The position numbers were made by a program, and so were the translations under genes. This document shows, piece by piece, positions 1,362-3,326 of a stretch of 64,000 bases of DNA. Source of the stretch: Macrostomum lignano (taxonomy: Eukaryota); assembly GCA_002269645.1 (NCBI GenBank), contig NIVC01001375.1:124001-188000 (forward strand). The letters are read 5' to 3'. The notes under the pieces are model-generated. The model saw only the letters and a program-made list of their open reading frames with translations. It was not told the DNA's origin and did no database searches. The first letter of the stretch is position 1. Every line of letters starts with the position of its first letter.

Positions 1362-1576
1362 TCAGAAGTCAGCAAATCTCTTAAAGTCGGCGAACCGCTT
1401 CTTGAAGTCGGCGAATCTCTTAAAGTCGGCGAATCTCTTCTTGAAGTCGGCGAATCTCTTAAAGTCGGCGAATCTCTTCTTGAAGTCGGCGAATCTTTTT
1501 CTAAAATCGGCGAAACGCTTTGTTGAAACCGAACTCTCCAGTTCTTGCTCGGCGGCCGACACAGCGCTGTTTGAGT
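1362..1576 (-). CDS. Neuropeptide precursor exon 2: (D)[24 protein letters not shown] x8, copies separated by KR/KKR/RKR, then stop
   Basis: Acceptor aaccttttcAG (AG at 1578-1577), phase 1, matching the phase-1 donor of exon 1. Eight identical FADF units are each preceded by a prohormone-convertase-type basic site. The last copy ends at TGA. Confidence 0.85.
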
Positions 1577-1611
1577 CTGAAAAGGTTTTTGCTGTACTTT
1601 GAATCCTCTGA

Positions 1612-2038
1612 TGTCTGTCTGTCTGTCTGTCTGTCTATGTGTCTGTCTGTCTGCCTGTCTGTCTGTCTGTCTGTCTGTCTGTCTGTCTGTCTGTCTGTCT
1701 GTCTGTCTGTCTGTCTGTCTGTCTGTCTGTCTGTCTGTCTGTCTGTCTGTCTGTCTGTCTGTCTGTCTGTCTGTCTGTCTGTCTGTCTGTCTGTCTGTCT
1801 GTCTGTCTGTCTGTCTGTCTGTCTGTCTGTCTGTCTGTCTGTCTGTCTGTCTGTCTGTCTGTCTGTCTGTCTGTCTGTCTGTCTGTCTGTCTGTCTGTCT
1901 GTCTGTCTGTCTGTCTGTCTGTCTGTCTGTCTGTCTGTCTGTCTGTCTGTCTGTCTGTCTGTCTGTCTGTCTGTCTGTCTGTCTGTCTGTCTGTCTGTCT
2001 GTCTGTCTGTCTGTCTGTCTGTCTGTCTGTCTGTCTGT
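1612..2038. repeat. (TCTG)n/(GACA)n microsatellite in the neuropeptide intron
   Basis: Near-perfect 4-bp tandem repeat. Confidence 0.98.
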
Positions 2039-2304
2039 CATTGTGTCTAAAAGACAATTTCAACGAAGTTTTCTTCGCTTTCTGCTCAGCTTCAAATTTT
2101 TCAGCGGAGCGTTAAACGAAATTAGAGGAGGCTGAGCCGCAGATGACTTGATCACCAACGCCATCTCAAGCTTGTGCAATCTTTAATTTAATAAAACTTT
2201 GCCTTCATGCTGATTTGACTAACAAGCAAAAGGTAGAAAAATTCGGTTTATAACTGGAATTCCAGACGTCTCATCAACTACCATTGTATTGTCTCCTCTC
2301 TCTC

Positions 2305-2860
2305 TCTACTACCTCCTTTTCAAACTCTACTCTACTCTCTACTCATGTCTCTACTCTCTACTTGACTCTACTCTAGTCTCTACTCTCTACTCTACTCTCT
2401 ACTCTACTCTCTACTCTACTCTCTACTCTACACTTTACTCTCTACTCTAGTCTCTACTCTAGTCTCTACTCTCTATTCTACTCTCTATTCTACTCTCTAC
2501 TCTCTACTCTACTCTCTACTCTACTCTCTACTCTACTCTCTACTCTGCTCTCTACTCTACTCTCTACTCTGCTCTCTACTCTACTCTCTACTCTCTACTC
2601 TACTCTCTACTCTACTCTCTACTCTACTCTCTACTCTACTCTCTACTCTAGTCTCTACTCTCTACTCTACTATCTACTCTACTCTCTACTCTCTACTCTA
2701 CTCTCTACTCTACTCTCTACTCTACTCTCTACTCTACTCTCTACTCTACTCTCTACTCTAGTCTCTACTCTCTACTCTACTATCTACTCTACTCTCTACT
2801 CTCTACTCTACTCTCTACTCTACTCTCTACTCTCTACTGGAGTCTCTACTCTCTACTCTC
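2305..2860. repeat. (CTCTA/CTCTACT)n mixed 5/7-bp simple repeat in the neuropeptide intron
   Basis: Tandem units read directly. Confidence 0.95.
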
Positions 2861-2917
2861 TGTTCCCACACTCGACTCTGATATCTGCATCTCAGTCTCC
2901 CTCCCGAGTGGTCTCAC

Positions 2918-3002
2918 CGTGAGCCGTGGCCGCAGCCACCAGGACGACCAGCATAGCCATCAGACCCAGGTAGCGAGTGCAGACAGCAGACGAGTGTCCC
3001 AT
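2918..3002 (-). CDS. Neuropeptide precursor exon 1: signal peptide MGHSSAVCTRYLGLMAMLVVLVAAATAH (alternative in-frame ATG at 3029)
   Basis: Hydrophobic core LGLMAMLVVLVAAA is followed by a small-residue cleavage region. Donor G|GTGAGA (GT at 2917-2916), phase 1. Splicing to 1576 gives a 99-aa (or 108-aa) preproprotein. Confidence 0.8.
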
Positions 3003-3326
3003 AGTGCTCAGTTGAGTAGTTCTCAGCATTGCCTGGTGCCTCTGTGCTCCGCAGTGATGACGAATGGTAAGATTCCCAAGATTTGGAGCCGGGTGAAGCC
3101 TATTTGTATCGGAAAAGTGGTTGGGAAGTTTTCCGAGATTCATAATTTATTGCCTTTTAAAGCATTGACCCAACTTTTTGACTAAACTGATCAACATTTA
3201 ATTACTGATTTATTGCTATCTAAAACGGTTGAATGAAACTTTATTAAATTTTACTTCATTCAGCTCAGTTCTGACTTTCATTTGTTGCTTTGAATCCTGC
3301 AAATATTCGGGCTATTGAACTGCTGA

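What the first reader, a model, noticed from the sequence alone, without database searches (positions are those of the whole stretch)
1362..3029. Unrecognised neuropeptide precursor encoding eight copies of the tetrapeptide FADF
Seen: the signal-peptide exon and the repeat exon join in phase (CAC G|AC TCA) to give [99 protein letters not shown]-stop, with AATAAA downstream. Established: a signal peptide, an acidic spacer and short repeats flanked by dibasic sites is the classic PC1/PC2 plus carboxypeptidase E precursor layout. The last copy ends at the stop codon and no copy has a Gly, so the product should be non-amidated FADF-OH. I do not recall a described FADF peptide. The gene is easy to miss because the coding repeat looks like one more minisatellite and the ORF track splits it.
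Basis: partly seen in the sequence, partly recalled or inferred. Interest (0 to 1): 0.9.

Follow-up and report, generated by a model that had tools for sequence, protein, structure and literature searches.

The report
Flatworm precursor of eight FADF peptides
Between minisatellites in what looks like a Macrostomum flatworm genome lies a small two-exon gene for a secreted precursor that would be cut into eight copies of the tetrapeptide FADF, an ordinary kind of signalling-peptide gene with an apparently undescribed peptide.

Summary
On the minus strand, an exon with a signal-peptide-like N-terminus (ATG 3029 or 3002, ending 2918, donor CACG|GTGAGA) can join in phase to an exon starting at 1576 (acceptor CCTTTTCAG|AC). 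That exon encodes an acidic spacer, then eight FADF copies separated by KR, KKR or RKR. TGA follows the last copy directly, and AATAAA lies 104 nt downstream.

It is more than a chance ORF in a minisatellite. The only variable columns in the 12-nt FADF core are the four third-codon positions, and all changes there are synonymous. Arg and Lys codons vary (AGA/CGT/CGG, AAG/AAA), with one amino-acid change, K to R. Random substitutions preserve the pattern with p about 4e-4 to below 5e-6. All five other frames change amino acids.

The only database relative is a Macrostomum lignano "Secreted protein" (A0A1I8F9E3). It matches exon 1 only and has an unrelated tail.

My reading is a genuine multi-copy secreted peptide precursor, cut by prohormone convertase and carboxypeptidase to non-amidated FADF. 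The splice, neuronal expression, the mature peptide and true novelty could not be tested.

It fails the motif tests for achatin (GFAD) and RFamides. I rate it a new member of a known kind, of moderate-low interest.

The parts
3154..3161 (-). Candidate TATA-like box (TTTAAAAG). A weak inference only.
   Evidence: Read directly. It lies 11 nt upstream of the in-frame ATG at 3143. A start site about 30 nt downstream would leave that ATG out of the mRNA and make ATG 3029 the first one. There is no ATG in any frame between about 3125 and 3030 (read). Not tested.
2918..3029 (-). Coding part of exon 1, from ATG 3029-3027 (alternative ATG 3002-3000) to the last exon base at 2918. The exon ends in phase 1 (CAC G).
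   Evidence: tblastn of P0001 (M. lignano A0A1I8F9E3) matches 3029-2916 at 85% identity over 40 aa, with two one-codon indels.
2922..3029 (-). Predicted signal peptide: n-region with Arg, h-region YLGLMAMLVVLVAAA, c-region A-T-A, with the predicted cut before His-Asp.
   Evidence: The 9-residue Kyte-Doolittle mean reaches 3.29 at LMAMLVVLV and falls below 0 after ATA. Ala sits at -3 and -1. The source names the near-identical P0001 'Secreted protein'. SignalP was not available.
1577..2917 (-). Intron of 1,341 nt, from GT 2917-2916 (GTGAGA) to AG 1578-1577 (CCTTTTCAG). It holds a 12/31-nt minisatellite (2325-2859) and (GACA)107 (1612-2039).
   Evidence: The length matches the average M. lignano intron of 1.1-1.4 kb (PMC5730564). 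The splice itself is inferred, not shown.
1521..1576 (-). Start of exon 2: acidic, Ser-rich spacer (D)[18 protein letters not shown].
1365..1520 (-). Eight FADF copies, each preceded by KR, RKR or KKR. From copy 3 onward the array is built from 39-nt two-copy units.
   Evidence: TRF reports period 39, 3.9 copies, 90% matches. Codon table. Selection test.
1362..1364 (-). TGA stop codon directly after the last FADF.
1253..1258 (-). AATAAA polyadenylation signal, 104 nt after the stop. It is the only A[AT]TAAA between 1362 and 1000 on this strand.

Best explanation
This is a genuine two-exon gene of a macrostomid flatworm (Macrostomum lignano or a close relative) encoding a 99-108 aa secreted preproprotein.

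Proposed pathway:
1. Exon 1 supplies a cleavable signal peptide that takes the protein into the secretory pathway.
2. Exon 2 supplies a short acidic spacer and eight FADF copies, each preceded by KR, KKR or RKR.
3. A subtilisin-like proprotein convertase (PC2 or furin type) cuts after each basic cluster.
4. A carboxypeptidase E/D-type enzyme trims the C-terminal Lys and Arg.
5. The result is eight free-acid FADF tetrapeptides per precursor ([M+H]+ 499.219). There is no amidation, because no copy carries a Gly.

The most likely role is a secreted signalling peptide, meaning a neuropeptide or peptide hormone acting on an unidentified receptor.

Shown here: the sequence anatomy, protein-level constraint on the FADF frame, the need for an upstream exon, the signal-peptide character of exon 1, and conservation of exon 1 in a Macrostomum protein.

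Inferred: the splice, the processing, the cell type and the function.
For: 1. Anatomy at exact coordinates.
2. Coding constraint. The four variable columns of the 12-nt core are exactly the four third-codon positions, all synonymous C/T. The Arg before each Phe uses AGA, CGT or CGG, and Lys uses AAG or AAA. The only amino-acid change is K to R in the optional third basic residue.
3. Random substitutions preserve ([KR]2-3 FADF)x8 with p = 3.9e-4 (5 hits), 5e-6 (8 hits) and below 5e-6 (11 hits).
4. The same differences change amino acids in all five other frames.
5. The two unit lengths, 18 and 21 nt, differ by exactly one codon.
6. The FADF frame has no ATG and is closed upstream by TAG at 1637-1635. 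It can therefore only be translated through splicing. Exon 1's donor is in the matching phase.
7. Exon 1 has signal-peptide hydropathy and an A-x-A cut site. It also recurs, with in-frame single-codon indels and an identical hydrophobic core, as the N-terminus of M. lignano A0A1I8F9E3, 'Secreted protein'.
8. Stop directly after the last copy, and a single AATAAA 104 nt downstream.
9. Intron length is typical for M. lignano.
10. M. lignano has a PC2 homologue with nervous-system-specific expression whose knock-down is lethal (PMC4490696).
11. The only other dibasic-delimited repeat in six-frame translation of the window has no stop after it.
Against: - There is no transcript evidence for the 2918/1576 junction.
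- The only external model containing exon 1 (P0001) continues into a 48-residue tail that is neither FADF nor present in this window.
- No protein with FADF repeats exists in 5.8 billion clusters or 1.84 billion representatives, and the exact spliced products are not on record. This is weak evidence, because those collections barely cover Macrostomum.
- A competing acceptor at 2046 (TTGTCTTTTAG|AC) has a better pyrimidine tract.
- The central copies are identical 39-nt duplicates, so the selection signal rests on copies 1, 2, 7 and 8. Two of the synonymous changes are CpG transitions, which are mutation hot spots.
- Four of six frames are open over the array, so openness alone means nothing.
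- SignalP and NeuroPred could not be run.
- The cell type is unknown.
Confidence: 0.68

Rival explanations
1. The gene is real and the precursor is processed as described, but it is not a neuropeptide. FADF would be released by a non-neuronal secretory cell (prostate or seminal-fluid gland, adhesive or rhabdite gland, gut or epidermal gland) as a pheromone, an allohormone transferred at mating, or a defence or feeding-related peptide.
For: Nothing in the sequence specifies a cell type. Furin-type cleavage at KR, RKR and KKR works in every secretory cell (established knowledge). The precursor has no homology to any conserved neuropeptide family. Multi-copy Kex2/furin-processed small peptides also serve as pheromones, for example yeast alpha-factor (my own knowledge).
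Against: In animals, signal peptide plus spacer plus many identical very short peptides between dibasic sites is overwhelmingly the layout of neuropeptide and hormone precursors (PMC6188537; PMC2953531). A net-anionic tetrapeptide is unlike antimicrobial peptides (my own knowledge).
Confidence: 0.2
2. The array is one more non-coding minisatellite of a genome full of them. The open frame, the dibasic pattern and the in-phase upstream exon are coincidence.
For: About 45% of the window is tandem arrays, and about 75% of the first 8 kb (summed by hand from the array coordinates). Many arrays are open in several frames. Four of six frames are open across this array. A period divisible by three occurs in roughly a quarter of the arrays.
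Against: - All core variation is synonymous, and Arg codons switch family while keeping Arg; p is 4e-4 or lower.
- Three of four control arrays spread their variation evenly over the three phases. The fourth (16072-16814) has only five variable columns, four of them in one phase.
- The stop follows the last unit exactly, with an AATAAA and an acidic spacer.
- An in-phase signal-peptide exon is conserved in a Macrostomum protein.
Confidence: 0.05
3. Exon 1 is spliced elsewhere or the array is read in another frame. For example, the acceptor at 2046 would give signal peptide + (TDRQ)n + ...[13 protein letters not shown]..., and a spliced-leader ATG added at 1576 would read the same DSPT frame.
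For: The acceptor TTGTCTTTTAG|AC at 2046 has 70% pyrimidines, against 50% for the one at 1576. It opens a 246-codon frame ending at 1307. The 244-aa ORF 1307-2041 exists. From my own recollection, not checked here, flatworm spliced leaders end in AUG.
Against: That frame depends on the exact copy number of a (GACA)107 microsatellite, so it would shift with every slippage event. In that frame the inter-copy differences are non-conservative (S/L, R/S, D/G). It produces very low-complexity protein.
Confidence: 0.03
4. The locus is a silent or decaying duplicate of an FADF gene whose functional copy lies elsewhere in a highly duplicated genome.
For: M. lignano assemblies hold about 180 Mb of duplicated non-repetitive blocks (PMC5730564). 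P0001 shows that at least one diverged second copy, or an orthologue, of exon 1 exists.
Against: Both exons, both splice sites, the stop and the poly(A) signal are intact, and no frame disruption is seen.
Confidence: 0.04

Closest known systems
Achatin-type precursors (achatin-I GFAD with D-Phe, Aplysia GdFFD, GFGN in many bilaterians)
   Same: Both give a non-amidated tetrapeptide with an aromatic and an acidic residue, sharing the F-A-D string with GFAD. In both, several copies sit on one precursor between dibasic sites. Bilaterian achatins are 'usually tetrapeptides' (PMC6188537; PMC12085718).
   Different: FADF has no N-terminal Gly, Phe is at positions 1 and 4 rather than 2, and Asp is at position 3 rather than the C-terminus. 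There is no sequence homology outside the peptide. Planarians are reported to lack a recognisable achatin (PMC3890597). The receptor and D-residue status are unknown.
FMRFamide-like multi-copy tetrapeptide precursors
   Same: A signal peptide followed by many copies of a four-residue peptide between KR-type sites, with an aromatic C-terminal residue.
   Different: RFamides end in Arg-Phe-Gly and are amidated. Here the Arg belongs to the cleavage site, no copy has Gly, and the C-terminus would be a free acid.
Lineage-specific multi-copy peptides, such as the 14 xenacoelomorph-specific types and the planarian spp/npp prohormones
   Same: Short taxon-restricted peptides in multiple copies, recognised only by a signal peptide plus repeated dibasic-flanked motifs. 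Some are non-amidated (PMC6188537; PMC2953531).
   Different: The FADF motif is not among those I could read.
P0018, an unnamed 302-aa precursor from a JGI environmental contig (Ga0307385_10070000)
   Same: It has a hydrophobic, signal-peptide-like N-terminus and about 13 copies of MGPQ[DS]WA[DN]F between KR sites, so an [FW]-A-D-F string next to basic residues.
   Different: The peptide is 9-10 residues, and a variable residue (E, D, K, R or S) sits between the Phe and KR, so its C-terminus differs. Similarity is confined to the periodic ADF-KKR pattern. The organism is unknown. I do not regard homology as shown.
Kex2-processed repeat precursors of fungi (yeast alpha-factor; ustiloxin-type peptide precursors)
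   Same: Signal peptide followed by tandem short core peptides separated by KR (my own knowledge).
   Different: The window is an animal genome, with a LINE carrying endonuclease, reverse transcriptase and RNase H domains, an FN3 exon with a WAP-like Cys-rich stretch, and a 1.3-kb intron. There are no Ste13-type dipeptide spacers.

Membership tests
Multi-copy secreted peptide (prohormone or neuropeptide) precursor | N-terminal cleavable signal peptide | tested here: met
   Hydropathy profile and A-T-A at positions -3 to -1. The source names the near-identical N-terminus of A0A1I8F9E3 'Secreted protein'. This is a proxy test only, because SignalP was not available.
Multi-copy secreted peptide (prohormone or neuropeptide) precursor | Several copies of a short peptide, each flanked by di- or tribasic convertase sites | tested here: met
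   Eight FADF copies, each preceded by KR, RKR or KKR, with the last followed by stop.
Multi-copy secreted peptide (prohormone or neuropeptide) precursor | The peptide and its cleavage sites are under purifying selection | tested here: met
   All core differences are synonymous, and basic residues are kept through codon-family switches. Monte Carlo p is 3.9e-4 or lower. This rests on within-array comparison only.
Multi-copy secreted peptide (prohormone or neuropeptide) precursor | A mature mRNA joins the signal-peptide exon to the repeat exon | not testable with these tools
   No Macrostomum transcript data were reachable. Canonical GT-AG in matching phase is the only support.
Neuropeptide in the strict sense | Expression in neurons or endocrine cells, a detectable mature peptide, and a cognate receptor | not testable with these tools
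   Needs in situ hybridisation or single-cell data, LC-MS/MS and receptor assays.
Achatin family | Tetrapeptide G-[FY]-x-[DN] with N-terminal Gly and the aromatic residue at position 2 | tested here: not met
   The peptide is F-A-D-F in all eight copies, and no Gly is present anywhere in the array. Motif taken from PMC6188537 and PMC12085718.
FMRFamide-like / RFamide peptides | C-terminal Arg-Phe followed by Gly as the amide donor | tested here: not met
   No Gly is present, and the C-terminus is Asp-Phe followed by basic residues or stop.
Any curated protein family (Pfam) | Significant profile match | tested here: not met
   No Pfam family matched at E <= 0.01 for the 108-aa product.
Non-coding minisatellite | Variation among units is indifferent to codon phase, with no gene signals at the edges | tested here: not met
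   Core variation sits only at third positions. Three of four control arrays show no phase bias. The array is bounded by an acceptor and a stop plus AATAAA.

The most novel reading that the evidence does not exclude
FADF is a previously undescribed, Macrostomum-lineage signalling tetrapeptide that repeat-masking annotation pipelines miss. In the boldest version it is the flatworm counterpart of the achatin system, a short acidic aromatic peptide that may carry a D-residue at position 2 (as in GdFAD), acting on an orphan GPCR in a phylum whose planarian representative is reported to lack achatin. The probability given is for the modest version, an undescribed bioactive peptide. The achatin-counterpart version I put at about 0.05.
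Probability: 0.4. Interest if true: 0.45.

Novelty: new member of a known kind. Interest (0 to 1): 0.35.

Why it matters
If the gene is expressed as modelled, it adds one candidate signalling peptide to a regeneration and reproduction model flatworm. The peptide can be synthesised and tested directly: bath application, RNAi, receptor deorphanisation, and mass spectrometry at m/z 499.22.

The practical lesson is about annotation. The coding repeat looks like the minisatellites around it. TRF reports it as a 39-nt array, and M. lignano assemblies are TRF-masked (PMC5730564). Genes of this type can therefore be lost in repeat-rich genomes. The one external gene model that contains exon 1 does not include an FADF exon.

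A codon-phase test on tandem arrays, asking whether variation sits only at third positions, is a cheap way to recover such genes. None of this changes how peptide precursors are understood to work.

Tried and rejected
- Homologue search with the spliced protein in 5.8 billion clusters gave only an exon-1 match to M. lignano A0A1I8F9E3.
- The exhaustive phmmer search of 1.84 billion representatives gave 21 hits. Twenty look like unrelated tandem-repeat proteins. The remaining one is an environmental precursor, P0018, which I judged not demonstrably homologous.
- Exact look-ups of P0001, the 66-aa ORF, both spliced products and the unspliced read-through products found nothing on record.
- The metagenome DNA scan for [10 protein letters not shown] gave a single hit, which lies antisense to a 475-aa ORF that I read as a bacterial methionyl-tRNA synthetase. 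I treat it as chance.
- I tried to confirm the organism with the FN3 exon (no hit at 1e-5) and the LINE reverse transcriptase (best 38% identity, no Macrostomum entry). This shows the collections barely cover the source genome. The genus assignment therefore rests on one 40-residue match.
- Rfam and tRNA scans of the window found nothing.
- Literature searches for [10 protein letters not shown] and Macrostomum neuropeptides found no such peptide. McVeigh 2009 and Koziol 2016 could not be read.
- I considered and rejected achatin or RFamide membership, a coding role for the 244-aa (TDRQ)n ORF, and a fungal Kex2-repeat protein.
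Full report
**What is there**

Read on the minus strand, the region holds a compact two-exon gene model.
- The ORF containing exon 1 opens at ATG 3143, with further in-frame ATGs at 3029 and 3002.
- A TATA-like TTTAAAAG lies at 3161-3154. If it is real, it would place the transcription start downstream of 3143 and make 3029 the first ATG. That ATG is also where the only related database protein starts.
- Exon 1 ends at 2918 in phase 1 (…GCC ACG GCT CAC G), followed by GTGAGA.
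- Without splicing, the frame stops after eight more codons (GETTREGD*).
- The acceptor CCTTTTCAG|AC puts the first base of exon 2 at 1576.
- The join gives …[24 protein letters not shown], then [46 protein letters not shown] and KR-FADF.
- TGA (1364-1362) follows the last copy directly.
- The only AATAAA on this strand in the next 360 nt is at 1258-1253.

**Is it more than a minisatellite with a lucky frame?**

This is the question that matters, because the surroundings are extreme.
- TRF finds arrays covering about 75% of the first 8 kb and about 45% of the whole window. I summed these figures by hand from the coordinates.
- Many arrays are open in several frames.
- TRF also reports the FADF array itself as a repeat (period 39, 3.9 copies, 90% matches).
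- Four of the six frames across the array are open. Openness therefore proves nothing. A period divisible by three proves little either, since roughly a quarter of the arrays have one.

What does discriminate is the pattern of differences between copies.
- In the 12-nt FADF core, exactly four columns vary. They are exactly the four third-codon positions, all C/T and all synonymous.
- The Arg that precedes each Phe is encoded by AGA, CGT or CGG. That is a switch of codon family that keeps the residue.
- Lys is AAG or AAA.
- The only amino-acid difference in the whole array is Lys to Arg in the optional third basic residue.
- Unit lengths differ by exactly one codon (18 versus 21 nt).

In a Monte Carlo test, 5, 8 or 11 random substitutions on the consensus array left all eight units as [KR]2-3-FADF in 3.9e-4, 5e-6 and fewer than 5e-6 of trials. 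The observed array carries about 11 nucleotide differences.

Two caveats apply. The middle copies are identical 39-nt duplicates, so the signal comes from copies 1, 2, 7 and 8. Two of the changes are CpG transitions. Even a transition-only model gives (1/3)^4, about 0.012, for the core alone, before the Arg codon switches are counted.

The same differences cause non-conservative changes in each of the other five frames. Three of four control arrays in the window spread their variation evenly across phases. The fourth has only five variable columns.

A six-frame regular-expression scan of the window for four or more dibasic-delimited units found only one other array (46998-47600, RRRLSWGA). It is open in two frames and is not followed directly by a stop.

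**Does the repeat exon need exon 1?**

Yes. The FADF frame is closed upstream by TAG at 1637-1635 and contains no ATG.

I enumerated all 380 AG sites downstream of the donor, between about 2878 and 1201.
- The FADF frame is reached in phase only from sites at 1630, 1618, 1591, 1576 and 1543.
- Judged by eye, 1576 is the only one of these with a short pyrimidine run before the AG (CCTTTTCAG).
- A rival acceptor at 2046 (TTGTCTTTTAG|AC) has a better tract. However, it leads through (GACA)107 into the DSPT[S/L]R frame. That frame would shift with every microsatellite slippage, and in it the copy differences are non-conservative.

**Exon 1**

Its product has a basic n-region. Its hydrophobic core is YLGLMAMLVVLVAAA, with a 9-residue Kyte-Doolittle mean reaching 3.29. 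Ala-Thr-Ala comes immediately before His-Asp. SignalP was not available.

Independent support comes from the single database relative, UniRef A0A1I8F9E3 of Macrostomum lignano, which its source names "Secreted protein".
- Its first 40 residues align to 3029-2916 at 85% identity.
- The alignment has two single-codon indels and an identical hydrophobic core and cut site.
- After the shared …AATAHG the protein continues into 48 residues that are neither FADF nor encoded anywhere in this window.

So the external model confirms exon 1 as an exon, and its donor position. It does not confirm the join to an FADF exon. That model may come from a paralogue, or it may have skipped a masked repeat exon. 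I cannot tell which.

**Organism and context**

The window is an animal genome.
- A LINE with endonuclease, reverse transcriptase and RNase H domains, broken by frameshifts, lies at about 55.7-59.4 kb.
- A fibronectin-III exon preceded by a WAP-like Cys-rich stretch lies at 19215-19937.

The Macrostomum assignment rests on the exon-1 match alone. The FN3 exon found nothing at 1e-5, and the LINE's best hit was 38% identical. The searchable collections therefore hardly cover this genome, and the absence of FADF proteins from them is weak evidence.

The repeat load and the 1,341-nt intron fit published M. lignano figures: 15% simple and tandem repeats, average intron 1.1-1.4 kb, and extensive duplication (PMC5730564).

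**How it most likely works**

The steps are inferred from established secretory-pathway biochemistry.
1. The signal peptide is removed.
2. A convertase cleaves after each KR, KKR or RKR.
3. A carboxypeptidase trims the basic residues.
4. With no Gly present there is no amidation, so the product is eight FADF-OH per precursor.

If only the tribasic sites were cut, [10 protein letters not shown] would result instead. I think this is less likely, since KR is the classic site.

M. lignano has a PC2 homologue with nervous-system-specific expression (PMC4490696).

Whether the producing cell is a neuron is not addressed by any data here. I put a non-neuronal secreted peptide at about 0.2.

**Comparison with known families**

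The layout is the ordinary multi-copy peptide precursor. New lineage-specific examples turn up in most surveys, for example 14 xenacoelomorph-specific types in PMC6188537.

The nearest named peptides are the achatins (GFAD, GdFFD, GFGN). These are non-amidated tetrapeptides sharing F-A-D with FADF. But the defining G-aromatic-x-D/N motif is not met, and neither is the RF-Gly motif of RFamides. Pfam finds nothing.

One environmental precursor, P0018, repeats MGPQ[DS]WA[DN]F between KR sites. The resemblance is limited to the periodic ADF-KKR pattern.

No paper in the searchable library mentions an FADF or KRFADF peptide in this sense. Two key flatworm surveys were not readable.

**Verdict**

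It is a new member of a known kind, and I score interest at 0.35.

Noticed in passing
window 1-64000: About 45% of the window is tandem arrays (roughly 40 arrays with periods of 4-244 nt), and about 75% of the first 8 kb. I summed both figures by hand from the TRF coordinates. (GACA)n/(TGTC)n microsatellites of 107, 277 and 150 units lie at 1612-2039, 14539-15649 and 31596-32193. (ATAG)99 lies at 32940-33335.
   Followed up: partly
window 53900-59400 (+): A non-LTR retrotransposon with endonuclease, reverse transcriptase and RNase H domains, split over several frames and so probably dead. The nearest database relatives are only 38% identical, and the only named hit among the top ten is Lian-Aa1 from an ant. 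It is flanked by 16/17-nt minisatellites.
   Followed up: partly
window 12471-12764, about 13564-13900 and 19215-19937 (-): Exon-like segments of a gene with a WAP-like Cys-rich stretch (CSSACNTDADCVFADSYKCCDTGLCRACRPP) followed by fibronectin-III repeats, which resembles anosmin. Pfam fn3 gives E = 2.7e-5, but there was no homologue at 1e-5 in the big protein collection. The 13564-13900 segment is my reading of the ORF only.
   Followed up: partly
window 2046 (-): An alternative 3' splice site, TTGTCTTTTAG|AC, lies just upstream of (GACA)107 and has a better pyrimidine tract than the one at 1576. In phase with exon 1 it opens a 246-codon (TDRQ)n…DSPT frame.
   Followed up: yes
P0001 (UniRef A0A1I8F9E3), residues 41-88: The Macrostomum lignano protein that shares exon 1 continues with a tail (GWSSTTLYMRSPDKHLDSARLAEPACQQ…) that is absent from this window. 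It could be a paralogue with a different 3' exon, or a mis-modelled gene whose repeat exon was masked. Unexplained.
   Followed up: partly
window 46998-47600 (+): A 24-nt minisatellite that reads RRRLSWGA/RRRLSWVA in two frames. It is the only other array matching a loose 'dibasic-delimited repeat' pattern. No stop follows the units directly. I used it as a negative control.
   Followed up: yes
window 1-135 (-): An ATG-initiated frame (MANVRDLICCLQENADLVRSLLSLRERKPLHRSFEHLNFFIKEVGQ…) runs off the window edge, downstream of the FADF gene on the same strand. It may be the first exon of the next gene.
   Followed up: no
L002 40-948 (JGI Ga0307385_10070000): A 1,253-nt environmental contig encodes a neuropeptide-like precursor (P0018) with a hydrophobic, signal-peptide-like N-terminus and about 13 copies of MGPQ[DS]WA[DN]F between KR sites. 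It has no name and no known organism.
   Followed up: partly
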